Source: Squalus acanthias (Eukaryota). Taken from it: a stretch of 64,000 bases of DNA. Below the pieces are notes generated by a model that was not told where the DNA came from, did no database searches, and saw only the letters and a list, made by a program, of their open reading frames with translations. Position 1 is the first letter of the stretch. The number at the start of each line of letters is the position of its first letter. Below are positions 9,081 through 61,319 of this stretch, in pieces. The stretch covers positions 50,406,001 through 50,470,000 of the forward strand of contig CM059443.1 in assembly GCA_030390025.1 (NCBI GenBank), written 5' to 3'. The position numbers and the translations under genes are program-made.

Positions 9081-9526
9081 TCAGGTTTCCTCCATTTTAG
9101 CATAAATAGGATTTTCTTCCATTTTTAACGGGCCAGGTCGTGGATCATCTTCCTCCAGCTGGGACTGTGTCACCGCGTCTACCGGGCAGCCTATCAAAGA
9201 ATAAATCTGCTCATTGGACAAAGCAACGGGATCCTCCTTACTGTCCTCTTTGGGCTGTGATTGGCCGTCTGGTTTGAGTTCAGCAGCTGAAGAGGTTTCA
9301 ACCTGCCGTCCATGGTCCGTGTGGTCTCTGCCTAGATATTAAGAGAGGAGATCACGTTTGATGGGTTCACTTCCAGTGGGGGACAGATAATGAAAGTGGA
9401 CTGTCTCGTTACTTGAGATAAAGGTCCAGGAGCTTTAGAACAGACACAGTGTTGACTGAGAGGATTATACTGAAAGATTGCAACGACTTACATTTTACTC
9501 CCTGGATTTCAGTTTTGTCTCCATCA
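9081..9526 (-). CDS. Gene A last two cytoplasmic exons (35 and 251 nt), ending QIYSLI...EENPIYAKMEET*
   Basis: 9526-9492 (ttcttag|...AAAT|gtaagt) and 9331-9081 (tatctag|...TGA) continue the frame. They are absent from the ORF track. Confidence 0.82.
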
Positions 9527-12500
9527 CTAAGAAAACAGAAAATTAAAACATGTGAATAATGAGTAACATAAGATTCAAACAATATCAAACCATTGTAAGT
9601 GGAGACTAGATTAGCTCACTTTCTCCCCAGAGCCTGGATTTCAGTCCAGCCCAGACTGAAATTCTCTCATTCATTTTCTCTCTCTCTGTCTCTCTCTCTC
9701 TCTGTCTCTCCGACTCTCGTTCTNNNNNNNNNNNNNNNNNNNNNNNNNNNNNNNNNNNNNNNNNNNNNNNNNNNNNNNNNNNNNNNNNNNNNNNNNNNNN
9801 NNNNNNNNNNNNNNNNNNNNNNNNNNNNNNNNNNNNNNNNNNNNNNNNNNNNNNNNNNNNNNNNNNNNNNNNNNCGTCTCTGTCTCCGTCTGTGTCTCTC
9901 ACTGTCTCTGTCTCTCTCTCTGTCTCTCTCTCTCTCTGTCTCTCTCTCTTTGTGTCTCTGTCTCTCTGTCATTGTCTCTCTGTCCCTATCTCTTTCTCTC
10001 TTGCTTTGTCTCTCTCTCTCTCTTTCTATCTTTGCTATGTGAGCAGTCCTCTCTACAATGAGTTTTCCCAGTCCCAATCCAATTCCTTGCCTAAAACTGC
10101 CCATCATTCAGTAAAATATTTGGACGAAATTGATCATTATCGTCAAATACGCCAAAATATTGTCCTGACAAAGTGTAAAAGAAAATAACTTCACACGGGC
10201 ACAGTGAAAGGAGCTATTCTGATATTGGGATAAAGGAGCACTATCAGGTCAGAGGGCAGAGTGATTTACACGGCCTCCAGCCATTCTATACCTGACTTAG
10301 AACTGTTCGGTTGTGAGATTGGCTGCACAGCCTGGAAATGTTTTGTGCTGGGTGGTGGAATAGATTAGTACGGCCCTTTCATATTTTAGGATCTGTTCTC
10401 AAATCAAGTCCAGAATATTGGGAATAAAAGTCTCTCTCTGTGCCTCTATTACTGTCTGTCTGTCCCTGTCTCTTTGTCTTTCTCTGTCTCTTTCTCTCGA
10501 AGGGTCCTTGATGAAATAAGTTTAGTCATCTCGTTCCAGTTTGTAGCTCGTGTGAGCCACAGTACAAAACTACCGCTAAATTGGCACTTTCACTCAAACA
10601 GGCCATGAGTTGTGAGAAGTGAAATGTCCGAGCTCCCTCCTGAGTTTGGAGTTGAGGAGCATTGTTGGGACAGTCCAGAGGGAGCTTTACGCTGCACCTA
10701 ATCTGGAGTGCTCCAAATGATACTGTGTGGCCACAGTGGAAAAGTAATCCATTTGCAGAGTGGGCTCCCCTCACCTTCATTACATTAACAATCTCCGAAC
10801 CCTCCATCGCAAAACAAACCCGTGGTCAGTGTTGAACGTTGCTGGGGCCGACAGCTGTCACTCTGCTTACCCTTTGACCATTGACTCTTCGATCAAACAG
10901 TACACATGCTCTGTAGAGTCAGACTTTGGGCCAGTGCTCTCCATTCCTTCACCAGGCCTTGGCTGGCTCGATGGCGTTGGAACTCTCGTCACCGAGTACG
11001 CAACATGCTCGTTGTCATCGCTCTGATCCCTTCTGGGAACCACAGAGTACGGGAAACCTAGACAGAAGGACGAGTAGACGATGTGTGCTTTTAGTTTCAA
11101 CTCTCAAAGGGACAGGCTTGGAAGAGCTGGGCAGTAATTCTAGTCACTTACATTCAGCCACCTGTGTCAGCTGCACATCACCGGCCCTACAGTTCGTAAA
11201 GAAAAGCAACCTGTAAATGTCCCATTAAATGAGGAAAACTATACAGAAAGTCTGCCTGAAAACTGAACAAATCCCATCCCTACCTGGGTCCTGGTGCTGA
11301 GGATCCTTCACAACACATGCCATAAGATTGGAAAGATAAATTTAAAAGTCTTTGTAAGGAGTCTGCACTTACAATTTTCTAGATTTAGAGCAAACATTTT
11401 AAAGCTCTTGCTTACCTTTGGCAGCTTGTCGTTTCCTTTGGATTATGCAAAGTGCCCCAACAATGCAAAGTACCCCAACAATGCAAATGATCACAACCGC
11501 ACACGCTATGGCTACTTTCACAGGTGTGGCAGTGTCTGGGCCTGCAGAGGAGAAGCAACATTAAGTTCAGTCTGTGCAATCCCGTGTTATATGTACAGCT
11601 GATCACACTGGTTACCTGGGCTGAGGAACAGACATTTCCGGTTAGAATCTGGAAAAGTGCAATGGCGAAGAAAGGAAATCGAACCAACTTTTAATGGGTA
11701 CAAACTGGACAACTGATCTGGAATCTATCAACTTTAATTTTTTTTATTCATTCATGGGACGTGGACGTCATTGACAAGGCCAACATTTATTGCCCATCCC
11801 TAATTGCCCTTGAGAAGGTGGTGGTGAGCTGCCTTCTTGAATCGCTGCAGTCCATGTGGTGAAGTTACTCCCACAGTGCTGTTAGGGAAGGAGTCCCAGG
11901 ATTTTGAGCCAGCGACGATGAAGGATCGGCGATGTACTTCTAAGTCAGGATGGTGTGTGACTTGGAGGGCAACTTGGAGATGATGGTGTTCCCATGAGCC
12001 TGCTGCCCTGTCCTTCTAGGTGGTAGAGGTCACGGGTTTGGGAGGTGCTGCCGAAGAAGCTTTGGCGAGTTGCTGCAGTGCATCTTGTAGCTGGTACACA
12101 CTGCAGCCAAGGTACGCCAGTGGTGGAGGGAGTGAATGTTTAAGATGTGGATGGGGTGCCAATCAAGCGGGCTGCTTTGTCCTGGATGGTGTCGAGTGTC
12201 TTCAGTGTTGTTGGAACTGCACTCATCGAGGCAAGTGGAGAGTATTCCATCACACTCCTTACTTGTGCCTTGTAGATGGTGGAAAGGCTTTGGTGAGTAA
12301 GGAGGTGAGACACTCGCTGCAGAATACCTAGCCTCTGACCTACTCTTGTTGCCACAGTATTTATGTGGCTGTTCCAGTTACGTTTCTGGTCAATAGTGAC
12401 CCCCAGGATGTTGATGGTGGGGGATTCGGCAATGGTAATGCCATTGAATGTTAAGGGGAGGTGGTTACACTCTCTCTTGTTGGAGATGGTCATTGCCTGG

Positions 12501-15500
12501 CACTTATGTGGCGCGAATGTTACTTGCCACTTATCAGCCCAAGCCTGAATGTTGTTCAGGTCTTGCTGCATGCAGACACGGACTGCTTCATTATCTGAGG
12601 AGTTGCGAATGGAACTGAATACTATGCAGTCATCAGCAAACATCCCCACTTCTGTCCTTATGATGGAGGGAAGGTCATTGATGAAGCAGCTGAAGATAGT
12701 TGGGCCTAGGACACTGCCCTGAGGAACTTTTGCAGCAATGTCCTGGGGCTGAGATGATTGGCCTCCAACAACCAGAACCACCTTCCTTTGTGATAGGTAT
12801 GACTCCAGCCAGTGGAGAGTTTACCCCCTGATTCCATTGCCTTCAATTTTACTAAGGTTCCTTGATGCCACACTCGGTCAAATGCTGCCTTAATGTCAAG
12901 GGCAGTCACTCTCACCTCCCCTCTGGAATTCAGCTTTTGTCCATGTTTGGACCAAGGTTGTAATGAGGTCTGGAGCCAAGTGGTTCTAGCAGAACCCAAA
13001 CTGAGCATCAGTGAGCAGGTTATTGGTGAGTAAGTGCCACTTAATAGTACTGTCGACAATACCTTCCATCACTTTGCTGATGATTGAGAGTAGACTGATG
13101 GCGCGGGAATTGACCGTTTTGGATTTATACTACTTTTTGAAGACCGGACATACCTGGGCAATTTTCCACTTTGTCGGGTAGATGCCAGTGTTGTAGCTGT
13201 ACTGGAACAGCTTGGCTAGAGGCACGGCTAGTTCTGCAGCACAAGCCTTCAGCACGACAGCCGGGATGTTGTCGGGGCTCATAGCCTTTGCTGTATCCAG
13301 TGCGCTCAACCGTTTCTTGATAGCACGTGGAGTGAATCAAATTGGCTGAAGACAGGCTTCTGTGATGGTGGGGACCTCAGGAGGAGGCCGAGATGAATCA
13401 TCCACTCGCCACTACTGGCTGAAGGTGGTTGCAAACACTTCAGCCTTGTCTTTTGCACTCACGTGCTGGGCTCTGACATCATTGAAATGGGGCTGTGCAT
13501 GGAGCCTCCTCCCGTTAGTTGTTTAATGGTCCACCACCATTCACGATGTGGCAGGACTGCAGAGCTTTGATCTCATCCATTGGTTGTGGGATCGCTTTAC
13601 TCTGTCTATAGCATGCTGCTTCTGCTGTTTAGCATGCATGTATTGTAGCTTCACCAGGTTGGCACCTCATTTTTTGGTACGTCTGCTGCTGTTCCTGGCA
13701 TGCTCTTCTACACTGCTCATTGAACCGGGGTTGGTCCCCTGGCTTGATGTTAATGGTAGAGTGAGGGATATGTCGGCCCATGAGGTTACAGATTGTGATG
13801 GAGTGCAATTCTGCTGCCGCTGATGGTCCACAGCACCGCATGGATGTCCAGTTTTGAGCAGCTAGATCTGTTCTGAATCTATCCCATTTAGCACGGTGGT
13901 AGTGCCACACAACACGATGGAGGGTGTCCTCAGGATGAAGACGGGTCCTCATCTCCACAAGGACTGTGCGGTGGTCACTCTTACCAATACTGTCATGGAG
14001 AGATGCATCTGCGACAGGTAGACTGGTGAGGACGAGGTCAAGTATGTTTCTCCCTCGTATTGGTTCTTTCACCACCCGCCGCTGGCAGCTATGTCCTTCA
14101 GGGCTTGGCCAGCTCCGTCAGTAGCGGTGCTACCGAGCCACTCGGTGATGGATATTGAAGTCGCCCACCCAGAGTACATTCTGTGCCCTTGCTACCCTCA
14201 GTGCTTCTTCCAAGTGGTGTTCAACGTGGAGGAGTACTGATTCATCAGCTGAGGGAGGGCGGAAGGTGGTAATCAGCAGGAGGTTTCCTTGCCCATGTTT
14301 GATCTGATGCCATGAGACCTCTTGGGGTCAGGGAGTCAATGTTGAGGACTCCAAGGGCCACTCCCTCCAACTGTATACCACTGTGCTGCCACCTCTGGTG
14401 GGTCTGTCTTGCCTGAGGGACAGGCCATACTTAGGGATGGTGATGGAGGAGCCTGGGACATTTCGTGAAAGAATTATTTATATTATTTATATTGAATTAT
14501 TTATATTAAATGAGTCGCATTGTTTCTAGATTGTATCACTTACTTTGAGTATTTGTACGAGTTAAGCTGCTGGTCACTGAGGAGAATCCAGATGTTGAGG
14601 TGGGGGTGTCTGAAGATTTACCACTGCTCATTACACTGGTTACCTGGGCTGAGGAACATACTTTTCTGGTTAGACTCTGGAATAGTGCAATGGCGAAGGA
14701 AGTAAATGAAAGCAACTTATAACGGCTAAAAACTGTACAACTGATCTGGAATGTCTCAGTTTGAATTATTGATATTAAATGATTCACATCATATTCTAGA
14801 TTGTATCGCTTACTTTGAGTATTTGTACGAGTTAAGCTGCTGGTCACTGAGGAGATTCCAGATGTTGAGGTGGGGGTGTCTGAAGTCTCTGCACTCGCCT
14901 CTGTCACAGTAAGGGAGATGTTTGCTGCAATCTTCCAGACAGGTTTCCCTGAATCCTGACCGTGGACAGCACAGAGATACTTCCCAGTGTCCACCACATC
15001 CGCTGAGTGAATAGTAAGGTTGTGAGACTGGGGTCTAGCAGTAGGATTGTCTGAGCTTTGGGCAGAGATTCTTTGTGACGACCTTCTATCCACACAGCAG
15101 CGTGTGTTAATTTTTGCCTCCTTTTCCTCAATGTGAACAGAGTGCAGACACTTGGAAACGTTTCCAGATCTGATCCAAAACAGAGTGAAGGGGAGCTTTT
15201 TTGTATTCTCAAACTGGCAGGGTAAAGTCACATTCACTCCCTCTGAGGAGATTTCTTCAGTAGAAAATATTTCATCTGAATGTATAAACAACATTTACAA
15301 GAACATTTATTAATATAATAATCTTCATTGCGGTAGTTTGTCAAACGATTTCCTAAAGTCCATGTACAGTATATTCCCTGCATTCCTCCATTTACCATAT
15401 CTGTTACCTTCTCGACGGTTTTTCAACCTCAATCATCCTCTTTGAAATCCGTGCCAGCTACTTATCACTATTTTCTCTTTATCTATATACATGGTTATTT

Positions 15501-18500
15501 CATCTTAATAAAGACCCTAAAGTTTTCCCAATGACAGTTATCTGCCCTAAAACCTCCTCTAATATCTCCCCAACACCTCCCAATATCTCCTCTAACATCT
15601 CACCTTATATCTCCCCTAAAGTCCCGGCAATAACTTCCCCGATACCACCCCATACTTCCCCTGATATCTCCTCCGATACTTCCCCGATCCCTCCCCCGAT
15701 ATTGCCCCAGTACACGTACCACTCTGGATTATCACAAAGAACAAGTCGTGGTTTTCACATCCCTCTCCTGACAGTGTGAGCCAGGACGGACAGTTCGATG
15801 ATCCTCCGTCTGTGGAATCCTGAGCCGAGCAGGTAAATACCATCGAGTTAAACGTCTCCACATCGAATGTCAGAGACTGAGACTCCATTTGTTCTTCATT
15901 TAATTTGCATTTACTAGACTTTGGTTTGCTGGGCCTTTTTCTCAACTTAGGACTGATGTTTTCACCAAATTTCCTTTCCTTCTTACATTTTATTTTGTCC
16001 ATTTCTGCTCCGAGATCAGTGGAGCTGCACAAGGTTACTTCATCCCCAGCACCAGTGGGCACGTTGCACTGCAGAGTGGTGACATCTCCTGGTCCTCGGG
16101 AGAAGAGATAAGTGGATCCTGCAGGGAAAGGGCAGAATCGGATAGAGATAAATAACATCCAACACAGGAAAGATCATTAAACACTCAATGTGACACAAGC
16201 CTCTCACAGTAAACGAAGGAATCATACTCTTGGTAATAGGCCAGTTTATTGTTCCTTTCATAGACTTCTTTGCCACAGTCTATAAATTAGCATCCCTCTC
16301 CATTCTCAGCCTTCTACACTGTTCCAACAAAGCTCAACGTAAGCTCGAGGAACAGCACCTCATAGAAGCATAGAAGATAGGAGCAGGAGTAGGCCATTCG
16401 GCCCCTCGAGCCTGCTCCGCCATTTAATGAGATCATGGCTGATCATCCAAATTCAGTACCCTGTCCCTGCTTTCTCCCCATATCCCTTGATCCCTTTAGC
16501 CTTAAGAAATATATCTATCTCCTTCTTGAATATATTTAATGAATTGGCCTCAACTGCCTTCTGTGGTAGAGAATTCCACAGGTTTACCACTCTCTGGGTG
16601 AAGAAATTCCTCCTCATCTCAGTCCTAAATGGCTTACCCCTTATCCTTAGACTGTGACCCCTGTTTCTGGACTCACCCGCCATCGGAAACATCCTTCCTG
16701 CATCTAGTCTGTCTAGTCCTGTTAGAATTTTATAAGTTTCAATGAGATCCCTTCTCATTCTTCTAAACTCTAGCGAATATAAGCCTAATCGACCCAATCT
16801 CTCTTCATACGTCATTCCTGCCATCCCAGGTATCAGTCTGGTAAATCTTCGCTGCACTCCCTCCATGGCAAGAACATCCTTCCTCAGATAAGGCGACCAA
16901 AACTGCACACAATACACAATACTCATCTTTCAATTAGGCACTTTACAGCCTTCTGGACTCAACATCGAGTTCAACAATTTCAGACCATAACCTCTGCCCC
17001 TATTTTTTCAGACAGCAGCTGTTGATGATTCTGCCATCCCCATTTGCAACATTTAACCACTCCTGCCTTCCACCCTATCACAGACCGTCCCTTTTCTTCT
17101 TTCCTCCCCGCCCCTCTTTCCCTGCCCCTGCACCTGGTTAAAATCTGTTACATCTCTAACTTTTTCCAGTTGTGACGAAGGATCACAGACCTGAAACGTT
17201 GACTCTGTTTCTCTCTCCACGGATGCTGCCTGACCTGCTGAGTGTTTCCAGCATTTTCTGTTTCTGTGCTGTAAATTAGCATATCCACTTGATGTTACCA
17301 ATTATTTTTTGTCTAATTACTTCTTCCAAATTGTTTCATTAACGCTTGTTGACAATGTCTATGTTTTCGGCCTTGTCGAAATGACCAACAATATCCTGTG
17401 TGATTACAATCACAGTGCGTTATCCTTCCTCAACCTCCTCAGCATCTCCAAGGCCCTTGACACAGTCAACCTCCGCAAATGCCTCTCCAATGGCCCACCT
17501 TTGTGGCACTGCCCGCAAATACATCCAGTCCTATCTGTCGCAGTGTAGCCAGCACATCCTCAGGAATCGCTCTTCTCCCGTGTCCAATGGTCGCCCCTCG
17601 TCCACCCAAGGCTCCATCCTTGCCCTATCCTATATTCCACCCATACGTGATGTCTCTCAGGAACGTTGTCAAGGAGTCAGCTTCTAAACGTAGCCAAGTC
17701 GATACCTCACTTCACCTCTCCATCAATGCCCTCAGTGCTGGACTGTCCGATTTCTTATCTGGCATCGGGTTCGGGAAAAACCAGGACTCTCCTCAGCTCA
17801 AAGTTGGGAAAGGCTAAGCCATCCCGTTCAGCTCCAGTACACACTGACCCTATTTGACCCTGAGCTGAACCTCAAACCCATATCCAGCCCACCACCAGAT
17901 GTCGTGACTTCCCCTCCCAAAGATTGCCTACCTCCATTCCTACCTCACCCTCAGTGCTGCTGGAACTCTCCTCCACAGCTTCATCTCCTCGACCACTGAC
18001 ATCTCCAATCCTTTCCTCATCGACCTCCTGAGCTTCACCGATAACAGACTCCAACTCAGCCGGAACCCATCACCCACATCCTGTCCCACACAGCATCCTA
18101 ATCACCAATCACTCCTGTCCTCACTGACCTCCCCCAGGCATTGAATTCAAAACTCCCCATTACACTCCTAGGGCAATGTCCTAGGCCCACCTATCTTCAG
18201 CTGCTTCATCAATGCCCTTCCCTCTATCATAAGGACAGAAGTGGGGATGTTCCCTGATGATTGCAGAGTGTTCAGCTCTATTCACAATTCCTCAGATAAT
18301 GAAGCAGTCCGTGCCTGCATGCAGCAACACCTGGACAAACATAGAAACATAGAAAAATCGGAGCAGGAGTAGGCCATTTGGCCCTTCGAGCCTGCTCCGC
18401 CATTCAATATGATCATGGCTGATCCTCTATCTCAATACCATATGCCCGCTCTCTCTCCATATCCCTTGATGCCTTTTGTGTCTAGAAATCTATCTATCTC

Positions 18501-21500: not shown

Positions 21501-23477
21501 TCCGCTGGGACATCTCCAGAATCCAGGGAATTTTGGTAAATTTTCACCAATGCATCCACTATCTCTGCAGCCACTTCTTCTAAGACTCTAGGATGCAGGC
21601 CATCAGGTCCAGGGGACTTGTCAGCCTTTAGTCCCATTAGTTTGCCTAGTACTTTTTCTCTAGTGATAGTAATTGTTTTAAGCTCCTCCCTCCCTATAGC
21701 CTGTTCATTATCAATTATTATTGGGCAACTTGAGCATCTGACAGGCACAATTCCCCCTGTAATGGCCCTCACAGACTTCACCCAGAAACTCTCCACTCAC
21801 TGACACAGATGTGTCAGTACTGCAGATCACTATTCCAATAGAGCTCGAATAAACACTGAATCACATCTCCCAGTCAGACTCGATTGTAACTCAGACATCA
21901 GCCGTGTTGGACTGAGGATAGGAGCAGACGTCACTTATCATTTCAGGAACTCAGTCTGTCTGCAGACTGCACCCACCACACACAGTCTGTTTAGAAAAAC
22001 CAGCAGCCAAATTACACAGAGACTGGTTACAAACCCCCCATTACACAGTCTGGATAGAGACCCCCCCATTACACAGTCTGGATAGAGACCCCCCCCATTA
22101 CACAGTCTGGATAGAGACCCCCCCCCATTACAGTCTGGATAGAGACCCCCCCCATTACAGTCTGGATAGAGACCCCCCCCATTACAGTCTGGATAGAGAC
22201 CCCCCCCATTACAGTCTGGATAGAGACCCCCCCCATTACACAGTCTGGATAGAGACCCCCCCCATTACAGTCTGGATAGAGACCCCCCCCATTACACAGT
22301 CTGGATAGAGACCCCTACCGCCCCCTCCAATCACAGTGTCAGTTCCCATTTCTTTACAGAAGAATCGTGAAATGGGTGGGTCTGTAATGTACAGAAGGAC
22401 CTGAGCTGCTCCATTTTGCCAGAGTTGCTGAATTCCAGCCCTGGTCCGTGTGGTGTTGTGGATCCTGCCCAGTGTGGTTTGCACCCTTTACACTTCTCCG
22501 CAGTATTTATTGGTGTGAGGCTCGGCTGAGTCATCAACCATAATTGTTACTTTAGAGTTCACAGTGATCGAGTCTGAGCACAAAATCTTACACAGAATTA
22601 CATAGAATGTACGGCACAGAAACAGGCCATTCGGCCCAACTGCTCCATGCCGGTGTTAATGCTGCACAGGAGCCTCATCCCACCCCTCTTCATCAAACCC
22701 TGTCAGCAAATCCTTCTCACGCTTCTGAATCTTCCACCATTTAATTCTTAAAGTGAGATATGATTCTGCAGTAAGCGAACTTGGGATAGGATCAGCGCTG
22801 TTCTCGTACTTCATCTCTGCGCTGTTTTAAAACAGGTGTTGAACCAAAGATGTTTGCAGCACTGAGGAAACCGTTCGGCCCATCGTGCCAGTGCTGGCTC
22901 TTTGCCAGAGCAAACCCATTGCCCCCCACTCTCCCCACAGCCCTGTATCTTCCTCTGCTTCAAATGTTTTTCCAGTTTTACTTCAAAAGATGTAAAGGTC
23001 TCTGCCTCAACCACCCCGTGTGATAAATTTTTGGGAACGAAGGGAATTAAGGGATATGGGGATAGTGCAGGAAGGTGGAGTTGAGGTAGAAGATGAGCCA
23101 AGATTTTGTTGAATGGCGGAGCAGGCTTGAAGTGCCAAATGGCCTGCTCCAGCTCCTATTTCTTATGTAAAACAACCCTCTGTGTGAAGAATTTTTTCCT
23201 AACCTGTCTCCTCACTCTCAGTGGCACTTTTGAACTGACGCCCCATGATTAAACCATGTTAAAATGGCCCAGCGAGGACTGTGATGCAAGCTCATTAAAC
23301 GTCCACACGAAAACAGCACTGATATCTTTCAATCCTTATATTTCTCCATTGGGATATAGATAGAAACTGATATTTCCAGATAAGAAATATGTTGCAGGTT
23401 AACGTAAAATATTAATCCTTACCTGTAGCATGTTGGAACAGAAGGAAAAGACCCACAAACAAAGCACCGAGCGCCAT
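9081..23477 (-). CDS. Gene A: type I transmembrane Ig-superfamily receptor (SP, atypical Ig domain, V-type Ig domain, S/T stalk, TM, Tyr-motif tail), ~545 aa, probably inhibitory
   Basis: Hand-spliced GT-AG exons with consistent phases: 23477-23423, 16118-15720, 15275-14814, 14676-14644, 11648-11616, 11541-11416, 11305-11284, 11186-11152, 11057-10871, 9526-9492, 9331-9081. They sum to 1638 nt (545 aa + TGA) with no internal stop. All exons and splice sites are conserved in paralogue B. An N-gap (9724-9874) lies in one intron. Confidence 0.85.
9665..10030. repeat. (CT/GT)n compound microsatellite containing assembly gap 9724-9874
   Basis: Visible directly. Confidence 0.95.
10871..11305 (-). 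CDS. Gene A cytoplasmic exons (22, 35 and 187 nt) with FPYSVV, VAYSVT and HVYCLI motifs
   Basis: Exons 11305-11284, 11186-11152 and 11057-10871 join in frame (phases 1-2, 2-1, 1-2). The 22-nt exon has a weaker AAG acceptor. Confidence 0.8.
11416..11541 (-). CDS. Gene A transmembrane exon GPDTATPVKVAIACAVVIICIVGVLCIVGALCIIQRKRQAAK
   Basis: 25 hydrophobic residues followed by a basic stop-transfer (QRKR). Acceptor ctcctctgcag|, donor AAAG|gtaagc. Confidence 0.9.
11740..14460 (-). mobile_element. CR1-clade family 2 LINE in the stalk intron of gene A
   Basis: RT ORF 12140-12781 (VPQGSVLGP/FADD) and EN-region ORF 13629-14075. The same insertion is in B and C, so it predates the gene duplications. 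Confidence 0.9.
14814..15275 (-). CDS. Gene A exon: V-type Ig domain D2 plus S/T-rich stalk
   Basis: VTLPC...LFWI...NLTI...DTGKYLC...ISLTV is a canonical V-set pattern. Acceptor cattcag|AT, donor CAAA|gtaagc, 462 nt, phase 1-1. Confidence 0.92.
15720..16118 (-). CDS. Gene A exon: atypical Cys-rich Ig-like domain D1
   Basis: Acceptor ccctgcag|GATCC, donor AGTG|gtacgt, 399 nt, phase 1-1. TTLQC and VFTC look like the B/F-strand Cys. 7 Cys; no C-strand Trp. Confidence 0.8.
16276..17270 (+). mobile_element. Penelope-like element remnant (GIY-YIG C-terminus plus pLTR) split by a CR1
   Basis: Peptide RKLEEQHL|IFQLGTLQPSGLNIEFNNFRP* joins across the insertion. Degenerate hammerhead core GTGACGA...TGAAAC at 17171-17200. 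Confidence 0.75.
16364..16921 (-). mobile_element. 5'-truncated CR1 family 1
   Basis: ORF 16453-16926 (YCVQFWSP...WNSLP); flanked by a CTCAT duplication (16359-16363 / 16922-16926). Confidence 0.9.
17360..18140 (+). mobile_element. Old, highly decayed L2-type LINE fragment
   Basis: Residual RT-like peptide LVEMTNNIL...ISKALDTVN resembling L2 'LxKVxNDIL...LSAAFDTVDH'. Confidence 0.5.
18165..19160 (+). mobile_element. CR1 family 2 fragment with a nested antisense CR1 family 1 (~18339-18995)
   Basis: Family-2 sequence stops and resumes at a repeated GGACAA. The inner ORFs 18432-19066 encode a CR1 C-terminus. Confidence 0.85.
19381..19850 (+). mobile_element. Near full-length tRNA-derived Deu-domain SINE (SacSINE1-like)
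   Basis: A-box-like GTGGTTCAGTGGG, B-box-like GAGTTCAAGAC, Deu-like core GTGCTGAGGGAGTGCCGCACTGTCGGAGGTGCC, L2-like tail ending TCTTTCTTT. Confidence 0.8.
20035..21720 (-). mobile_element. CR1 family 1-related LINE, frameshifted RT
   Basis: ORFs 20193-21796 with RT motifs; CATAAGAA tail at 20035. Confidence 0.9.
22034..22311. repeat. Minisatellite, 10 x 27-29 bp: C(6-9)ATTAC(AC)AGTCTGGATAGAGA
   Basis: Counted directly. Confidence 0.95.
23423..23477 (-). CDS. Gene A signal-peptide exon MALGALFVGLFLLFQHAT(G)
   Basis: ATG, 18 mostly hydrophobic codons, then a phase-1 donor ACAG|gtaagg. An upstream acceptor ttctctcacag| at 23533 implies a further 5' non-coding exon. Confidence 0.85.
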
Positions 23478-47000: not shown

Positions 47001-47095
47001 GAAACTGACCCCGCACAACACACCCTACATTTGGCAGCATCTTCTTCCTTGGTGAAGACAGATGCAAAGTACTCGATCAGTACCTCAGCCCTTTT
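44020..47095 (-). mobile_element. CR1 LINE (RT fragments) interrupted by a solo LTR
   Basis: ORFs 44092-45671; the element resumes at 47030. Confidence 0.88.
45658..47029 (+). mobile_element. Solo LTR (1372 bp), same family as 36981-38307
   Basis: TGTAGG...CCTACA termini, TSD TTTG (45654-45657 / 47030-47033). Empty paralogous site gactttggca at 311-320. Confidence 0.9.
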
Positions 47096-49410: not shown

Positions 49411-51039
49411 TTGTGCCTTAAAATCCACTCCTTTGATCAAACTTTTGGTCACCCCTTCTCTTATCTCCTTCTTTAGCTCAGACTCCAATTTTTCCGAACA
49501 CCTCTCTATGGGGACATGTTGGGAACAGTTCAGTTTTTCCACCAGTTCCTCTTTGTCATCTTTTGTCTTGGGAAGTTTGAACCAGAGGAACAAATGAAAA
49601 AGAGGAAGTCCCCTGAATGTGATAAATATATATCTAACTCGAGGTTTATTAGTTGCAGTTCTTCCACCCAAAGAAAAGGTCCCACCAGCCTAGAAATATC
49701 TGAGAACTGTTACTGCAGATCACACAGTATAAATGCGTCAAATTATTAACCAGCAGGAAAACTCAAAGACTGAATCCATTTGTATATCCGGCTGAATCTC
49801 ACACCCACTTCGACACCAATAAGCTGTAAATAGCCAAGCCTTTTACACTTGCATCATTGTGAAATTCGAACTGATGATGGGCAATCATCGCACACTTCCT
49901 GCCACTTTGTATGGAGGAGGCTTTAGTACTGAGTTCATTAGGATTCATTTCACTTCAGTACTTGTATGTGTGGTGTTCATATTGTAAATAACACCCATTG
50001 TTCCAGAATTAGGTGCTGAAGTCAAGGGCTGGACAATGAGCCAAATGCCAGGGTTATGAGGGTAAATTCACTGACTCTATCCCCTCCCCGCACCCCGCCA
50101 GCAGTGAGCTCTGCTTGAACGAGACACAATTTATCAGAGGGCCACAGTGCTAACCCCTGACCCCTGTTTGAGCATGGCTGCCCACAAGGAGTGTGGGATT
50201 GGTGAATCTAGTGTGAAAGTCCTTTTATCTTACTGAGCCATGCATTAAACATTTCCAACATTAAAATATAAACTTCTAATTTCAATGTAGTTACACTGTT
50301 TTATGCTTTGCAAAATACTATTCAGAGATCGGCTGGGGGCAGACAATTTGTACCAAACTTTCCCTTACACAATCGTGAATTTCCAGCTCAGCGTCCTCAT
50401 AAATTGGGTTCTGCGTCCCCCTCCGCCCCCTCTCCACAGCCCATTGCCCCCTCTCCACAGCCCATTCCCCCCACTCCCCCCACCCCACTCCCTCCTCCCA
50501 CTTCCTCCTGAGTCTGATTGCAGTGTCCTCACTGAGAGCAGTTCATTCATTCAATTGGTTTGGCATAAAATTCCTGCTGGACAGATAACAAAGCAATGGA
50601 TCCTCCTTACTGTCCTCTTTGGGCTGTGATTGGCCGCCTGGTTTGAGTTCAGTAACTGAAGAGGTTTCAACCTGCCGTCCATGGTCCGTGTGGTCTCTGC
50701 CTAGATATTAAGAGAGGAGATCACGTTTGATGGGTTCACTTCCAGTGGGGGACAGATATTGAAAGTGGACTGTCTCGTTACTTGAGATAAAAGTCCAGGA
50801 GCTTTAGAACAGACACAGTGTTGACTGAGAGGATTATACTGAAAGATTGCAACGACTTACATTTTACTCCCTGGATTTCAGTTTTGTCTCCATCACTAAG
50901 AAAACAGAAAATTAAAACATGTGAATAATGAGTAACATAAGATTCAAACAATATTAAATCATTGTAAGTGGAGACTAGATTAGGTCATTTTCTCCCCAGG
51001 GCCTGGATTTGAGTCCAGCCCAGACTGAAATTCTCACAT

Positions 51040-51450
51040 TCATTTTCTCTCTCTGTCTCTCTCTCTCTCTGACTGTCTCTCATTGTCTCTCGGACACTCG
51101 TTCTCCCTGTCTCTTTCTCTTTCTATGTCTCTCTCTCTCTCTCTTTGTCTGTCTCTCTCTGTCTCTCTCTCTGTCTGTCTCTCTCTCTCTGTCTCGCGAT
51201 CTGTCTCTCTGTCTCGCGANNNNNNNNNNNNNNNNNNNNNNNNNNNNNNNNNNNNNNNNNNNNNNNNNNNNNNNNNNNNNNNNNNNNNNNNNNNNNNNNN
51301 NNNNNNNNNNNNNNNNNNNNNNNNNNNNNNNNNNNNNNNNNNNNNNNNNNNNNNNNNNNNNNNNNNNNNNNNNNNNNNNNNNNNNNNNNNNNNNNNNNNN
51401 NCCTATCTCTTTCTCTCTTGCTTTGTCTCTCTCTCTCTTTCTATCTTTGC
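51040..51450. repeat. (CT/GT)n microsatellite containing assembly gap 51220-51401
   Basis: Visible directly. Confidence 0.95.
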
Positions 51451-53154
51451 TATGTGAGCAGTCCTCTCTACAATGAGTTTTCACAGTCCCAATCCAATTC
51501 CTTGCCTAAAACTGCCCATCATTCAGTAAAATATTTGGACGAAATTGATCATTATCGTCAAATACGCCAAAATATTGTCCTGACAAAGTGTAAAAGAAAA
51601 TAACTTCACACGGGCACAGTGAAAGGAGCTATTCTGATGTTGGGATAAAGGAGCACTATCAGGTCAGAGGGCAGAGTGATTTACACGGCCTCCAGCCATT
51701 CTATACCTGACTTAGAAATGTTCGGTTGTGAGATTGGCTGCACAACCTGGAAATGTTTTGTGCTGGGTGGTGGAATAGATTAGTACGGCCCTTTCATATT
51801 TTAGGATCTGTTCTCAAATCAAGTCCAGAATATTGGGAATAAAAGTCTCTCTCTGTGCCTCTATTACTGTCTGTCTGTCCCTGTCTCTTCGTCTTTCTCT
51901 GTCTCTTTCTCTCGAAGGGTCCTTGATGAAATAAGTTTAGTCATCTCGTTCCAGTTTGTAGCTCGTGTGAGCCACAGTACAAAACTACCGCGAAATTGGC
52001 ACTTTCACTCAAACAGGCCATGAGGTGTGAGAAGTGAAATGTCCGAGCTCCCTCCTGAGTTTGAAGTTGAGGAGCATTGTTGGGACAGTCCAGAGGGAGC
52101 TTTACGCTGCACCTAATCTGGAGTGCTCCAAATGATACAGTGTGGCCACAGTGGAAAAGTAATCCATTTGCAGAGTGGGCTCCCCTCACCTTCATTACAT
52201 TAACAATCTCCGAACCCTCCATCCCAAAACCCGTGGCCAGTGTTGAACGTTGCCGGGGCCGACAGCTGTCACTCTGCTTACCCTTTGACCATTGACTCTT
52301 CGATCAAACAGTACACATGCTCTGTAGAGTCAGACTTTGGGCCAGTGCTCTCCATTCCTTCACCAGGCCTTGGCTGGCTCGATGGCGTTGGAACTCTCGT
52401 CACCGAGTACGCAACATGCTCGTTGTCATCACTCTGATCCCTTCTGGGAACCACAGAGTACGGGAAACCTAGACAGAAGGACGAGCAGACGATGTGTGCT
52501 TTTAGTTTCAACTCTCAAAGGGACAGGCTCGGAAGAGCTGGGCAGTAATTCTAGTCACTTACATTCAGCCACCTGTGTCAGCTGCACATCACCAGCCCTA
52601 CAGTTAGTAAAGAAAAGCAACCTGTAAATGTCCCATTAAATGAGGAAAACTATACAGAAAGTCTGCCCGAAAACTGAACGAATCCCATCCCTACCTGGGT
52701 CCTGGTGCTGAGGATCCTTCACAACACATGCCATAAGATTGGAAAGATAAATTTAAAAGTCTTTGTAAGGAGTCTGCACTTACAATTTTCTAGATTTAGA
52801 GCAAACATTTTAAAGCTCTTGCTTACCTTTGGCAGCTTGTCGTTTCCTTCGGATTATGCAAAGTGCCCCAACAATGCAAAGTACCCCAACAATGCAAATG
52901 ATCACAACCGCAAACGCTATGGCTACTTTCACAGGTGTGGCAGTGTCTGGACCTGCAGAGGAGAAGCAACATTAAGTTCAGTCTGTGCAATCCCGTGTTA
53001 TATGTACAGCTGATCACACTGGTTACCTGGGCTGAGGAACAGACATTTCCGGTTAGAATCTGGAATAGTGCTTTGGCGAAGAAAGGAAATCGAACCAACT
53101 TTTAATGGGTACAAACTGGACAACTGATCTGGAATCTATCAACTTTAATTTTTT

Positions 53155-55880
53155 TAATTCATTCATGGGATGTGGGCGTCATTGACAAGGCCAACATTTA
53201 TTGCCCATCCCTAATTGCCCTTGAGAAGGTGGTGGTGAGCTGCCTTCTTGAACCGCTGCAGTCCATGTGGTGAAGGTACTCCCACAGTGCTGTTAGGGAA
53301 GGAGGCCCAGGATGTTGAGCCAGCGACGATGAAGGAACGGCAATATACTTCTAAGTCAGGATGGTGTGTGACTTGGGGGGCAACTTGGAGATGATGGTGT
53401 TCCCATGAGCCTGCTGCCCTGTCCTTCTAGGTGGTAGAGGTCACGGGTTTGGGAGGTGCTGCCGAAGAAGCTTTGGCGAGTTGCAGCAGTGCATCTTGTA
53501 GCTGGTACACACTGCAGCCAAGGTACGCCAGTGGTGGAGGGAGTGAATGTTTAAGATGTGGATGGGGTGCCAATCGAGCGGGCTGCTTTGTCCTGGATGG
53601 TGTCGAGTGTCTTCAGTGTTGTTGGAACTGCACTCATCGAGGCAAGTGGAGAGTATTCCATCACACTCCTTACTTGTGCCTTGTAGATGGTGGAAAGGCT
53701 TTGGTGAGTAAGGAAGTGAGATACTCGCTGCAGAATACCCAGCCTCTGACCTACTCTTTTTGCCACAGTATTTATGTGGCTGTTCCAGTTACGGTTCTGG
53801 TCAATAGTGACCCCCAGGATGTTGATGGTGGGGGATTCGGCAATGGTAATGCCGTTGAATGTTAAGGGGAGGTGGTTAGACTCTCTCTTATTGGAGATGG
53901 TCATTGCCTGGCACTTATGTGGCGCGAATGTTACTTGCCATTTATCAGCCCAAGCCTCAATGTTGTCCAGGTCTTGCTGCACACAGACATGGACTGCTTC
54001 ATTATCTGAGGAGTTGCGAATGGAACTGAACACTGTGCAGTCATCAGCAAGCATCCCCACTTCTGTCCTTATGATGGAGGGAAGGTCATTGATGAAGCAG
54101 CTGAAGATAGTTCGGACTAGGACACTGCCCTGAGGAACTTTTGCAGCAATGTCCTGGGGCTGAGATGATTGGCCTCCAACAACCAGAACCACCTTCCTTT
54201 GTGATAGGTATGACTCCAGCCAGTGGAGAGTTTACCCCCTGATTCCATTGCCTTCAATTTTACTGAGGTTCCTTGATGCCACAATCGGTCAAATGCTACC
54301 TTGATGTCAAGGGCAGTCACTCTAACCTCCCCTCTGGAATTCAGCTTTTGTCCATGTTTGGACCAAGGTTGTAATGAGGTCTGGAGCTAAGTGGTCCTCG
54401 CAGAACCCAAACTGAGCATCAGTGAGCAGGTTATTGGTGAGCAATTGCCACTTAATAGTACTGTCGACAATACCTTCCATCACTTTGCTGATGATTGAGA
54501 GTAGACTGATGGGTCGGGAATTCACCGTTTTGGATTTATACTACTTTTTGAAGACCGGACATACCTGGGCAATTTTCCACTTTGTCGGGTAGATGCCAGT
54601 GTTGTAGCTGTACTGGAACAGCTTGGCTAGAGGCACGGCTAGTTCTGGAGCACAAGCCTTCAGCACGACAGCCGGGATGTTGTCGGGGCTCATAGCCTTT
54701 GCTGTATCCAGTGCGCTCAACCGTTTCTTGATATCACGTGGAGTGAATCAAATTGGCTGAAGACTGGCTTCTGTGATAGTGGGGACTGCAGGAGGAGGCC
54801 GAGATGAATCATCCACTCACCACTTCTGGCTGAAGATGGTTGCAAACACTTCAGCCTTGTCTTTTGCACTCATGTGCTGGGCTCTGACATCATTGAGGAT
54901 GGGGATGTGCATGGAGCCTCCTCCCGTTAGTTGTTTAATGGTCCACCACCATTCACGATGTGGCAGGACTGCAGAGCTTTGATCTCATCCATTGGTTGTG
55001 GGATCGCTTTACTCTGTCTATAGCATGCTCCTTCTGCTGTTTAGCATGCATGTATTGTAGCTTCACCAGGTTGGCACCTCATTTTTAGGTACGTCTGCTG
55101 CTGTTCCTGGAATGCTCTTCTACACTGCTCATTGAACCGGGGTTGGTCCCCTGGCTTGATGTTAATGGTAGAGTGAGGGATATGTTGGCCCATGAAGTTA
55201 CAGATTGTGATGGAGTACAATTCTGCTGCTGCTGATGGTCCACAGTACCTCATGGATGTCCAGTTTTGAGCTGCTAGATCTGTTCTGAATCTATCCCATT
55301 TAGTACGGTGGTAGTGCCACACAACACGATGGAAGGTGTCCTCAGGATGAAGACGGGTCCTTGTCTCCACAAGGACTGTGCGGTGGTCACTCTTACCAAT
55401 ACTGTCATGGAGAGATGCATCTGCGACAGGTAGATTGGTGAGGACGAGGTCAAGTATGTTTCTCCCTCGTGTTGGTTCTTTCACCACCCGCCGCTGGCAG
55501 CTATGTCCTTCAGGACTCGACCAGCTCGGTCAGTAGCGGTGCTACCGAGTCACTCTTGGTGATGGACATTGAAGTCCCTCACCCAGAGTACATTCTGTGC
55601 CCTTGCTACCCTCAGTGCTTCTTCCAAGTGGTGTTCAACGTGGAGGAGTACTGATTCATCAGCTGAGGGAGGCCGGTAGGTGGAAATCAGCAAGAGGTTT
55701 CCTTGCCCATGTTTGACCTGATGCCATGAGACCTCTTGGGGTCAGGGAGTCAATGTTGAGGACTCCAAGGGCCACTCCCTTCCGACTATATACCACTGTG
55801 CTGCCACCTCTGGTGGGTCTGTCTTGCCTGAGGGACAGGACATACTTAGGGATGGTGATGGAGGAGCCAGGGACATTTTG
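53155..55880 (-). mobile_element. CR1-clade family 2 LINE in the stalk intron of copy C
   Basis: Paralogue of 11740-14460, sharing a small internal deletion with A (14100 / 55490) that B lacks. Confidence 0.9.
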
Positions 55881-56149
55881 TGAAAGAATTATTTATATTA
55901 TTTACATTGAATTATTTATATTAAATGAGTCGCATTGTTTCTAGATTGTATCACTTACTTTGAGTATTTGTACGAGTTCAGCTGCTGGTCACTGAGGAGA
56001 TTCCAGATGTTGAGGTGGGGGTGTCTGAAGTCTCTGCACTCGCCTCTGTCACAGTCAGGGAGATGTTTGCTGCAATCTTCCAGACAGGTTTCCCTGAATC
56101 CTGACTGTGGACAGCACAGAGATACCTCCCAGTGTCCACCACATCCGCT

Positions 56150-61310: not shown

Positions 61311-61319
61311 CGCACGGTA

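What the first reader, a model, noticed from the sequence alone, without database searches (positions are those of the whole stretch)
9081..56149. Hidden tandem array of a probably undescribed shark-type inhibitory Ig receptor family
Seen: 11 phase-compatible GT-AG exons rebuild two intact ~545-aa type I membrane proteins (A, B) and a pseudogene (C), with a fourth unit starting at 61320. The layout is SP, odd Ig domain, V domain, mucin-like stalk, uncharged TM, and a five-tyrosine tail. Established: clustered, fast-turnover, Tyr-motif IgSF receptors are typical innate immune regulators (mammalian CD300/SIRP/CD200R/KIR, teleost NITR/DICP, skate MDIR). Inference: this architecture matches none of those that I can recognise, so it may be a lineage-specific family undergoing birth-and-death evolution. 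Most exons are invisible in the ORF track.
Basis: partly seen in the sequence, partly recalled or inferred. Interest (0 to 1): 0.9.

Follow-up and report, generated by a model that had tools for sequence, protein, structure and literature searches.

The report
Shark two-Ig receptor gene array
The window holds two intact, transcribed genes and one broken copy of a membrane receptor with two antibody-like domains and a tyrosine-rich tail; the family is unnamed and unstudied, yet relatives occur from sharks to platypus.

Summary
On the minus strand lie two intact multi-exon genes, A (23477-9081) and B (43520-28949), a truncated pseudogene C (56161-50588), and the 3' flank of a fourth unit (61309-61770). 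All splice sites are GT-AG and all phases fit. Spliced transcript contigs and annotated shark orthologues confirm most junctions. Both N gaps lie in a CT-rich simple repeat inside one intron.

Corrections: the stalk exon is a 105-nt exon (14648-14544), not twin 33-nt mini-exons. In B an LTR-like insertion splits it.

Every relative I found is labelled only "uncharacterized", apart from a few automatic misnomers, and I found no paper on the family. But it is not shark-specific: the same odd-V domain, V domain, TM and Cys-x-Pro-Tyr-Ala-Val tail occur in sturgeon, teleosts, lungfish, amphibians, reptiles, kiwi and monotremes.

Other sharks carry paired forms. The long-tail form has an uncharged TM and five conserved tyrosines, as in A, B and C. 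The short-tail form has an Asp in the TM.

"Inhibitory" is inferred only: none of the five tyrosines in A or B fits the canonical ITIM. Membership of DICP could not be tested by sequence. The scan's other notes on this family are on this same window.

The parts
23423..23477 (-). Gene A exon 1: signal peptide (MALGALFVGLFLLFQHAT, phase 1 donor)
   Evidence: 96% identical to the B copy. 15 of 18 residues match residues 1-18 of Heptranchias P0002.
15720..16118 (-). Gene A exon 2: D1, a derived V-type Ig domain with a Lys-rich variable loop (399 nt, phase 1-1)
   Evidence: The model has pLDDT 78.6 and a V-type fold, VIA Z 8.8. Contigs with 0 mismatches lie at 15856-16024, and the joint to the V exon is seen.
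14814..15275 (-). Gene A exon 3: V-set Ig domain plus 30-aa Ser/Thr stalk (462 nt, phase 1-1)
   Evidence: Pfam V-set E 1e-5. The model has pLDDT 86.1. Contigs lie at 14812-15082 with 2-3 mismatches. 17 of 30 stalk residues are Ser or Thr.
14544..14648 (-). Gene A exon 4 (optional): second stalk exon, 105 nt, phase 1-1 (QVTSVMSSGKSSDTPTSTSGFSSVTSSLTRTNTQ)
   Evidence: The same exon peptide is present in the Pristiophorus, Heterodontus and Mustelus models and absent from the Heptranchias model. RNA use in this species is not shown.
11416..11541 (-). Gene A exon 5: uncharged transmembrane exon with an 18-nt tandem duplication
   Evidence: The joint to the 22-nt exon is seen in 4 of 4 runs.
11284..11305 (-). 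Gene A exon 6: 22-nt micro-exon
   Evidence: Found from the RNA joints 11304>11415 and 11185>11283, CT..AC on the + strand. Phase fits.
11152..11186 (-). Gene A exon 7: 35-nt micro-exon
   Evidence: RNA joints 11185>11283 and 11055>11150 in 4 of 4 runs. Phase fits.
10871..11057 (-). Gene A exon 8 (cy1): tyrosines 1-3 (FPYSVV, VAYSVT, HVYCLI)
   Evidence: Contigs with 0-2 mismatches.
9724..9874 (.). Assembly gap inside the cy1-cy2 intron of gene A, within CT-rich simple repeat
   Evidence: The B copy has 688 bp of the same repeat at this place. Not filled.
9492..9526 (-). Gene A exon 9 (cy2): 35 nt. In another frame it reads VMETKLKSRE-stop, close to the C-terminus of short-tail relatives.
9081..9331 (-). 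Gene A exon 10 (cy3): tyrosines 4-5 (QIYSLI, NPIYAKM) and the stop codon
   Evidence: 60 of 78 residues match P0002.
43466..43520 (-). Gene B exon 1: signal peptide
39453..39857 (-). Gene B exon 2: D1
   Evidence: 27 of 131 aligned residues differ from A.
38489..38971 (-). Gene B exon 3: V + stalk; its acceptor lies 6 nt upstream of A's
   Evidence: The RNA joint 15281>15720, with a 15-nt B-type insertion, is carried by a 1053-nt contig.
36981..38307 (-). 1327-bp LTR-like insertion (TG..CA ends, 4-bp GTGT target duplication) that splits gene B's 105-nt stalk2 exon 16 nt after its start
   Evidence: A second copy lies at 45658-47029.
33783..33890 (-). Gene B TM exon (108 nt, without the 18-nt duplication)
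33238..33672 (-). Gene B 22-nt (33672-33651), 35-nt (33553-33519) and cy1 (33424-33238) exons
28949..29394 (-). Gene B cy2 (29394-29360) and cy3 (29199-28949, with stop)
50588..56161 (-). Unit C, a pseudogene. It holds the 3' 203 nt of the V exon with an in-frame TGA (56161-55959), TM 52952-52827, 22-nt 52716-52695, 35-nt 52597-52563, cy1 52468-52282, cy2 50895-50861, and cy3 cut at 50588. It has no SP, D1 or stalk2. Gap 51220-51401 lies in its intron.
61309..61770 (-). 3' flank of a fourth repeat unit (matches A 6507-6967); no exon of it lies in the window

Best explanation
The window carries a tandem array of long-tail members of an unnamed, jawed-vertebrate-wide family of type I receptors.

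Each protein consists of:
- a signal peptide;
- a membrane-distal, derived V-type Ig domain (D1) with a variable Lys-rich loop;
- a canonical V-set domain with extra cysteines;
- an O-glycan-type Ser/Thr stalk;
- an uncharged TM;
- a tail of about 190 aa with five conserved tyrosines.

Shown:
- A and B are intact and C is a recent truncated copy.
- Family transcripts are spliced as modelled.
- Orthologues exist from sharks to monotremes.
- Other sharks also have short-tail partners with an Asp in the TM and nearly identical ectodomains.

Inferred: the ectodomain binds a fast-changing ligand on cells or microbes. After binding, Src-family kinases phosphorylate the tail. The tail then recruits SH2 or PTB proteins: ITIM-like sites for SHP or SHIP phosphatases, NPxY for Dok-type adaptors, and YxxM for PI3K p85. 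The long-tail form would thus set a threshold against the short-tail, adaptor-coupled form, as in other paired immune receptors.
For: Gene models:
-.

Transcription and splicing:
- One search shows four CT..AC joints at the predicted exon borders in 4 of 4 runs.
- Contigs identical to A lie in D1 and cy1.

Folds:
- D1 has a V-type fold, VIA Z 8.8, rmsd 2.8 over 97 residues.
- The V exon matches Pfam V-set. Its Foldseek best hit is Nav beta4 V at 1.9e-7, followed by PD-1, CD96 and CD8.

Family breadth:
- 84 proteins reach E<=1e-3 in 1.84 billion representatives. Four shark proteins are the closest, followed by many two-domain proteins of 320-420 aa.
- Named taxa span sharks to monotremes.
- D1, V and tail motifs are conserved.
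- 27 of the 84 carry PY[AS]V.
- The V tree follows the species tree: shark clade 98/99, A+B 99/91.

Pairing:
- Long-tail forms occur in 8 shark species.
- Short-tail Asp-TM forms occur in 4 species, with Asn or His variants in 2 more.
- Heptranchias short and long forms are 99% identical over the ectodomain.

Tail:
- NPxY is present in 11 of 11 shark sequences.
- A canonical ITIM sits at Tyr1 in 5 of 11.
- YxxM is present in 4 of 11, and in A and B.

Ectodomain divergence between A and B is mostly amino-acid-changing: dN/dS is 1.31 for D1 and 1.71 for V.
Against: - No tyrosine of A or B fits the canonical ITIM or ITSM. The family-wide CxPYAV motif is not a known docking site, so 'inhibitory' is an analogy.
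- The dN/dS values rest on 4-6 synonymous changes per exon and were not tested for significance.
- No short-tail (Asp-TM) exon lies in this window, so pairing is shown only in other species.
- The runs are labelled 'RNA?' by guess. Tissue and organism are coded. Several contigs come from paralogues rather than from A or B.
- Ligand, expressing cells and signalling are all untested.
- Four of the five tyrosines also fit the endocytic YxxPhi pattern.
Confidence: 0.7

Rival explanations
1. The genes are cartilaginous-fish members of the DICP family (diverse immunoglobulin domain-containing proteins), which is already described in teleosts, holosteans and coelacanth. On this reading the family is known and only its range is new.
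For: Passages of bioRxiv 10.1101/2021.06.11.448072 describe DICP genes in these terms:
- Exons for signal peptide, D1, D2, TM and then tail.
- Some genes are D1a-D2a-D1b-D2b.
- There are four conserved cysteines per domain.
- There are inhibitory, activating and ambiguous forms.
- Range: teleosts, holosteans and a coelacanth candidate.

The family here shares several of these traits:
- The same exon order.
- A D1-V-D1-V member in Heptranchias.
- About four conserved cysteines per domain.
- Long-tail and charged-TM forms.
Against: - None of the named relatives I saw is called DICP: 30 clusters, and 22 + 3 + 25 rows.
- The teleost relatives are clupeiform, characiform, siluriform and elopomorph. 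No zebrafish, carp, salmon, tilapia or pufferfish protein appeared, although DICPs are described from those fishes.
- As I recall the 2012 DICP paper (recalled, not read), DICP D1 is the canonical V and D2 is merely 'Ig-like', the reverse of what is seen here.
- No DICP sequence could be reached with these tools, so there was no direct test.
Confidence: 0.12
2. The proteins are endocytic, adhesion or co-stimulatory receptors rather than inhibitory ones. On this reading the tail tyrosines are sorting signals (YxxPhi, NPxY), or a PI3K site (YxxM), as in CD28 or ICOS.
For: - FPYSVV, HVYCLI, QIYSLI and NPIYAKM all fit YxxPhi.
- The last tyrosine is both NPxY and YxxM.
- None is a canonical ITIM.
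- The nearest folds of the V domain include adhesion-type V domains: Nav beta4, nectin-1, P0 and CD96.
Against: - Short-tail Asp-TM partners with 99%-identical ectodomains are typical of paired immune receptors, not of sorting or adhesion receptors.
- A canonical ITIM sits at Tyr1 in 5 of 11 shark relatives.
- Copy turnover and an ectodomain that changes faster than the tail point the same way.
Confidence: 0.15
3. The array consists of decaying copies without function; the open frames are a remnant of recent duplication.
For: - Unit C is clearly dead.
- Gene B's stalk2 exon is split by an insertion.
- The introns are full of transposons.
Against: - A and B keep 9-10 exons open with intact splice sites.
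- The cy1 and cy3 exons are 99% identical between A and B, against 95-98% in the flanking DNA.
- Contigs identical to A are present and spliced.
- Orthologues are conserved across sharks.
Confidence: 0.03

Closest known systems
Uncharacterised shark proteins predicted by automatic annotation: Heptranchias perlo XP_067829442 (533 aa), Pristiophorus japonicus isoforms (550-557 aa), Carcharodon LOC121271932, Mustelus asterias LOC144480561, Scyliorhinus torazame, Rhincodon LOC125487102
   Same: The architecture is the same from end to end. Each exon of A and B maps in order. Identity is 74-80% in V and 57-61 of 61 residues in cy1 for the closest ones. The five tyrosines are the same.
   Different: They come from other species and none has a name or a study. 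The Heptranchias model lacks the second stalk exon; the Pristiophorus, Heterodontus and Mustelus models have it.
Uncharacterised two-Ig proteins of bony vertebrates, e.g. Chrysemys LOC101950452, Apteryx LOC112974736, Tachyglossus LOC119931841, Ornithorhynchus LOC103166618, Protopterus LOC122806918, Huso huso KAK6476809, Denticeps LOC114766096
   Same: D1 shares GxTYF..LxC..GxFAC..C-x3-FFIV. V shares YWIK..SxCLxS..HCC..SDSGxYLC. Both have a TM and a tail with CxPYAV and further YS tyrosines. Their V domains follow the species tree.
   Different: They are about 350-420 aa with tails of about 80 aa and 3-4 tyrosines, and 25-37% identical in V. They lack the long Ser/Thr stalk. Each appeared as a single LOC, though copy number was not checked. 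Shark proteins have a longer tail ending in NPIY.
Paired Ig-like immune receptors (KIR, LILR, CD300, SIRP, PILR; fish NITR and DICP)
   Same: Clustered genes with copy turnover. Long-tail Tyr-motif forms and short-tail forms with a charged TM residue share near-identical ectodomains.
   Different: There is no significant sequence link to any of them. The membrane-distal domain is the odd one and the V-set domain is membrane-proximal. The charged TM residue of the short form is Asp, not Lys or Arg. The tail motif CxPYAV is not an ITIM.
CD300 / pIgR-type V receptors, including skate MDIR and carp SITR
   Same: SITR has the 'rare' order of an N-proximal Ig domain followed by a C-proximal V domain (PMC3031540, section 5 read). 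MDIRs are cartilaginous-fish multigene receptors (passages).
   Different: Those V domains have a WCR motif in strand C, two cysteine pairs, and BLAST E<=1e-9 to CD300 or pIgR. Here strand C reads FWIR/YWIK. CD300 is not among the 60 best PDB sequence matches, and pIgR scores only E 0.008 on a partial stretch.
CD200R (inhibitory receptor that signals through NPxY and Dok; function recalled, not from a call)
   Same: A membrane-distal NPxY tyrosine is conserved in 11 of 11 shark sequences. As in CD200R, there is no canonical ITIM.
   Different: CD200R is V + C2 with the V domain distal (recalled). No sequence similarity was found.

Membership tests
Immunoglobulin V-set domain (Pfam PF07686) | Significant match to the V-set profile; B- and F-strand cysteines, strand-C Trp, DxGxYxC | tested here: met
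   The V exon scores E 1.1e-5 (A ORF) and 7.2e-8 (B ORF). 26 of 27 family members match. The model has pLDDT 86.1 and V-domain folds are the best matches.
Immunoglobulin fold, V type (D1 domain) | Beta-sandwich that superposes on V domains | tested here: met
   There is no Pfam or PDB sequence match. The model (pLDDT 78.6) gives VIA Z 8.8-8.0, and the rows shown are mostly V-type domains: TCR V, pIgR D2, VNAR, TREM-1. The Foldseek best hit is only E 1.8e-3. A Z near 8 is close to the tool's stated background for models without a clear match.
CD300 / pIgR / MDIR / SITR-type V receptors | WCR motif in strand C, a second cysteine pair, and BLAST E<=1e-9 to CD300 or pIgR (PMC3031540 section 5) | tested here: not met
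   Strand C reads FWIR. The best PDB sequence matches are TCR alpha at 1.4e-3, PD-1, and a partial pIgR stretch at 0.008; CD300 is not in the 60 listed. No relative is named MDIR among 25 shark rows. There was no direct comparison with the MDIR sequences themselves.
NITR | Membrane-distal V domain with a J-like FGxGTxL motif (VJ exon), followed by an I-type domain | tested here: not met
   The distal domain is D1, not a VJ domain. The V exon ends WKIAANISLTV with no FGxG. The definition comes partly from passages of 10.1101/2021.06.11.448072 and partly from recall.
DICP | Exon order SP, D1, D2, TM, tail; some D1a-D2a-D1b-D2b forms; long-tail and charged-TM forms | tested here: met
   compared with passages of 10.1101/2021.06.11.448072. 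These traits are shared by many IgSF receptor families and do not define DICP on their own.
DICP | Sequence kinship of D1 and D2 with named DICP domains | not testable with these tools
   No DICP sequence was reachable, and supplements are closed. Indirect evidence: no relative is named DICP, and none comes from zebrafish, carp, salmon, tilapia or pufferfish.
ITIM-bearing inhibitory receptor | At least one cytoplasmic S/I/V/L-x-Y-x-x-I/V/L | tested here: not met
   0 of 5 tyrosines in A and in B fit. Tyr1 is canonical in 5 of 11 shark relatives. This lowers 'is an ITIM receptor', not 'works like one'.
Paired activating/inhibitory receptor system | Near-identical ectodomains on a long signalling tail and on a short tail with a charged TM residue | tested here: inconclusive
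   Met in other sharks: Asp-TM short forms occur in 4 species, and Heptranchias short and long forms are 99% identical over the ectodomain. No short-form TM exon lies in this window. An unchecked scan note (s1-889756) places an Asp-TM gene 3.5 kb beyond the window.

The most novel reading that the evidence does not exclude
This is an ancient orthologous receptor gene, older than the split of cartilaginous and bony vertebrates. It has never been named or studied. It has a derived distal V domain, a proximal V domain, and its own conserved tail motif (Cys-x-Pro-Tyr-Ala/Ser-Val). It was kept from sharks to monotremes, was not seen in therian mammals, and in sharks grew into arrays of long-tail and Asp-TM short-tail partners. 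On this reading it marks a regulatory axis of jawed-vertebrate immunity that mouse and human work could not have found.
Probability: 0.4. Interest if true: 0.7.

Novelty: new variant of a known kind. Interest (0 to 1): 0.55.

Why it matters
Receptor families of this kind control NK, myeloid and lymphocyte thresholds, and almost none is characterised in cartilaginous fishes.

This family gives comparative immunology several things:
- a tractable family that can be followed by orthology from sharks to monotremes, which is unusual for fast-evolving immune receptors;
- a conserved but unassigned tyrosine motif that can be tested directly;
- clear long-tail and short-tail partners in sharks.

It also corrects misleading automatic names: 'serine-rich adhesin for platelets-like', 'PD-L1' and 'PILR alpha'.

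Tried and rejected
- Twin 33-nt mini-exons (14676-14644 and 11648-11616). They have AG/GT borders and phase 1-1, but no stored protein contains their peptide. Orthologues instead show a 105-nt exon that starts 5 nt before the supposed donor. Rejected.
- My own first 66/69-nt version of stalk2. Replaced by the 105-nt exon.
- Reading the 1053-nt and 766-nt contigs as a direct V-to-TM splice. Only 62 of the 229 nt after the V exon were placed, so up to 167 nt are unknown. That count equals 105 + 62, which fits inclusion of stalk2, but this is not shown. One X1 contig joins V to a TM-like start with 4 differing letters and may come from a paralogue.
- ESM Atlas with D1: best score 0.86, only weak Ig-leaning rows. 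No use.
- PDB sequence and profile searches: only generic Ig matches.
- Paper searches found no description of this family:
  - One search was badly posed and returned skateboarding papers.
  - searched MDIR / immune-type receptor / cartilaginous.
  - searched DICP.
  - searched six LOC identifiers and found 0 papers.
  - searched shark / ITIM / IgSF / paired receptors / multigene family.
  Subscription papers and supplements were not searchable.
- Review PMC6795676 (passages) lists no such receptor in cartilaginous fish.
- A profile search with a tetrapod-first alignment found only 3 rows, so absence from therian mammals is 'not seen', not shown.
Exons were translated and searched one by one, protein lengths were obtained by arithmetic, and public orthologue proteins served for full-length comparisons.

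Full report
**What is there**

The window is vertebrate-like: GC 0.47, CpG o/e 0.38, with two N runs at 9724-9874 and 51220-51401. It is crowded with LINE-type reverse-transcriptase ORFs.

Self-BLAST shows a large repeat unit present three and a bit times:
- A 9985-14615 = C 51402-56030 at 97.2%.
- A 10521-14638 = B 32889-36982 at 94.8%.
- A 7851-9709 = B 27716-29576 at 97.7%.
- The Ig-exon region of A and B is 92% identical.
- A 6507-6967 recurs at 61309-61770 (93.7%), and once in B and once in C.

All coding parts are on the minus strand.

**Gene models**

I read the minus strand and checked borders and phases by script, exon by exon. Gene A has these exons:
- SP 23477-23423
- D1 16118-15720
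- V plus stalk 15275-14814
- stalk2 14648-14544
- TM 11541-11416
- 22-nt exon 11305-11284
- 35-nt exon 11186-11152
- cy1 11057-10871
- cy2 9526-9492
- cy3 9331-9081

Every exon is bounded by AG and GT, the phases chain without a break, and there is no internal stop. Gene B (43520-28949) has the same exons. The first intron of A is 7.3 kb of transposons, which is why its signal-peptide exon lies far upstream.

By arithmetic A encodes 523 aa without stalk2 and 558 aa with it; B encodes 526 aa. I did not build or search a joined protein.

Unit C keeps only the last 203 nt of the V exon, with an in-frame TGA. It also keeps the TM, 22-nt, 35-nt, cy1 and cy2 exons and 113 nt of cy3. It lacks SP, D1 and stalk2, so it is a pseudogene. 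The fourth unit is represented only by its 3' flank.

**The gaps**

Both N runs lie in the intron between cy1 and cy2, inside CT-rich simple repeat. They are 196 bp or more from the nearest splice site. In the gap-free B copy, the stretch between the flanks that align to A is 688 bp of the same repeat. The gaps therefore do not touch the reading frame. An exon hidden in them cannot be strictly excluded, but B has none there. I did not fill them.

**Independent support**

Orthologue mapping:
- Each exon of A and B maps in order onto Heptranchias perlo XP_067829442 (P0002): SP 1-18, D1 20-154, V 156/158-315, TM to 352, 22-nt 355-359, 35-nt 362-371, cy1 373-433, cy2 435-445, cy3 447-529.
- Mostly one residue is left between neighbouring exons, which is what split codons predict. 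Two residues are left at the TM-m22 and m22-m35 borders.

Transcript contigs:
- Eight public runs from two studies hold parts of 14500-16150. Ids and organisms are coded and the label is 'RNA?'.
- I laid contigs of four runs on 10800-16300. They show joints 11055>11150, 11185>11283 and 11304>11415 in 4 of 4 runs, and 15281>15720 in 4 of 4.
- The three tail joints have CT..AC ends on the + strand, that is GT..AG on the minus strand, at the predicted borders. The two micro-exons were found this way.
- The D1-V joint uses B's acceptor, 6 nt upstream of A's. The contig carrying it has B's 15-nt insertion.
- Contigs identical to A cover 15856-16024 and 10871-11055.
- Not shown: the SP-D1, cy1-cy2 and cy2-cy3 junctions.
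- The V-TM region is ambiguous. One X1 contig joins V to a TM-like start with four differing letters. Two longer contigs have up to 167 unplaced letters between V and 11479.

**The stalk**

Those sites exist, but no stored protein contains their peptide.

Instead, the Pristiophorus, Heterodontus and Mustelus models carry a second stalk exon beginning (T/I/D)QV(T/N).., which corresponds to a 105-nt exon at 14648-14544. The Heptranchias model skips it.

In B this exon is split 16 nt after its start by a 1327-bp insertion. The insertion has TG..CA ends and a GTGT target duplication. B can therefore only skip the exon or use a cryptic acceptor.

**What the domains are**

- The V exon matches Pfam V-set. 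With a 42-row alignment it folds at pLDDT 86.1. Its best structural matches are V domains of Nav beta4 (E 1.9e-7, TM 0.78), PD-1, CD96, CD8 and pIgR D2.
- By sequence it has only weak, generic matches in the PDB: TCR alpha 1.4e-3, PD-1, and a partial pIgR stretch.
- D1 has no Pfam or PDB sequence match. With a 37-row alignment it folds at pLDDT 78.6, with a disordered 50-56 loop.
- D1 superposes on V domains at VIA Z 8.8, rmsd 2.8, 97 residues (TCR V, pIgR D2, VNAR, TREM-1). Foldseek alone gave nothing below 1e-3.
- The stalk is 17 of 30 Ser/Thr.
- The TM has no charged residue.

**The family**

An exhaustive HMMER search of 1.84 billion representatives with B's V exon gave 84 proteins at E<=1e-3.
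- Four shark proteins are closest, at 60-77% identity.
- Next come many proteins of 320-420 aa, about 30-40% identical, with the V domain in second position.

Names looked up for 30 of the 84, plus three profile searches, show the following taxa:
- Sharks: Heptranchias, Pristiophorus, Mustelus, Carcharodon, Cetorhinus, Scyliorhinus, Heterodontus, Hemiscyllium, Chiloscyllium, Rhincodon.
- Sturgeon.
- Teleosts: clupeiform, characiform, siluriform and elopomorph.
- Lungfish, salamanders and frogs.
- Lizards, turtles and kiwi.
- Echidna and platypus.

Almost all are 'uncharacterized' or 'hypothetical'. [quoted passage not shown] I saw no therian mammal, but I did not see all names.

The alignment shows conserved D1 and V signatures and a tail motif CxPYAV. 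27 of the 84 hits carry PY[AS]V. Pfam has only generic Ig models for them.

A V-domain tree follows the species tree: sharks 98/99, teleosts 96/99, monotremes 100/100. A+B (99/91) is sister to the Heptranchias copies (100/99). So the duplications are within species (37 rows, chosen from the named relatives).

**Pairing in sharks**

Shark proteins fall into two forms:
- Long-tail: uncharged TM ..LICIVGVICIIRRKRQ, tails of 160-195 aa with 5-7 Tyr, seen in 8 species.
- Short-tail: TM LVLYL..LIC(I/L)DG..CII with an Asp, tails of 18-39 aa without Tyr, seen in Heptranchias, Heterodontus, Pristiophorus and S. torazame. Mustelus has Asn and Hemiscyllium has His at that position.

The Heptranchias short form is 99% identical to the long form over the ectodomain. 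A, B and C are long-tail; no short-form TM exon is in the window.

The short forms end in a peptide close to VMETKLKSRE (8 of 10 residues in Pristiophorus). That peptide is the cy2 exon read in another frame, as would follow from splicing TM directly to cy2. An unchecked scan note places an Asp-TM gene 3.5 kb beyond the window.

**The tail**

A and B carry FPYSVV, HVAYSVT, EHVYCLI, EQIYSLI and NPIYAKM. None is a canonical ITIM or ITSM. The last is both NPxY and YxxM.

Among 11 shark sequences:
- NPxY is present in 11.
- YxxM is present in 4.
- Tyr1 is a canonical ITIM in 5.

**Divergence between A and B**

- D1: 27 of 131 residues differ, dN/dS 1.31.
- V: 17 of 153 residues differ, dN/dS 1.71.
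- TM plus tail: dS 0.014.
- Counts are small and untested.
- Identity rises from 92% at the 5' end to 97.7% at the 3' end. This fits partial homogenisation.

**Comparison with the known**

- CD300 / pIgR / MDIR / SITR-type V domains are defined by WCR, two cysteine pairs and strong BLAST similarity (PMC3031540, section 5 read). None of these is met.
- NITRs have a distal VJ domain. That is not met.
- DICPs share the exon order, the doubled D1-D2 forms and the functional classes (passages). I could reach no DICP sequence, and supplements are closed. Names and taxa of the relatives argue against identity. I put this at about 12%.
- I found no paper on the family. The library lacks most subscription journals.

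**Verdict**

This is an undescribed family, and it is clustered with copy turnover. But it is jawed-vertebrate-wide rather than shark-specific.
- 'Inhibitory' is a reasonable inference from pairing and ITIM-like sites. It is not a finding.

Noticed in passing
window 36981-38307 and 45658-47029: A 1327-bp element with TG..CA ends and a GTGT target duplication sits inside gene B's stalk2 exon. A second, 87-89% similar copy lies at 45658-47029. It looks like a solo LTR.
   Followed up: partly
window 11462-11497 (gene A TM exon) and the same place in unit C: An 18-nt tandem duplication adds six residues (CIVGVL/CIVGAL) to the TM of A and C but not of B. Pristiophorus long-tail proteins show a similar repeat in their TM.
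   Followed up: partly
window 9492-9526, 29360-29394, 50861-50895: The 35-nt cy2 exon is used in two frames across the family. In long-tail proteins it reads DGDKTEIQGVK. In short-tail shark proteins the other frame gives the C-terminus, a VMETKLKSRE-like peptide followed by a stop.
   Followed up: partly
window 7851-16213 versus 27716-39952: A-B identity rises stepwise from 92% (D1 and V exons) through 94.8% (middle) to 97.7% (3' end). The cy1 and cy3 exons show no synonymous change. This suggests partial gene conversion or unequal crossing-over.
   Followed up: no
window 29545-30436; gaps 9724-9874 and 51220-51401: About 0.9 kb of CT-rich imperfect simple repeat with internal direct repeats lies in the cy1-cy2 intron. 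The same repeat caused both assembly gaps in A and C.
   Followed up: partly
window 2751-6075, 12140-14075, 20794-21796, 31047-32786, 59417-61246 and others: Many LINE-type reverse-transcriptase and endonuclease ORF fragments lie on both strands, several inside the introns of A and B. They reach very high depth in the transcript contigs.
   Followed up: no
beyond the window end (scan notes s1-889756, s1-889808): Unchecked notes say that a gene 3.5 kb past the window has a TM with an Arg motif and an Asp. That would fit a short-tail partner of this family as the next unit.
   Followed up: no
public proteins P0001, P0018, P0114: [quoted passage not shown]
   Followed up: partly
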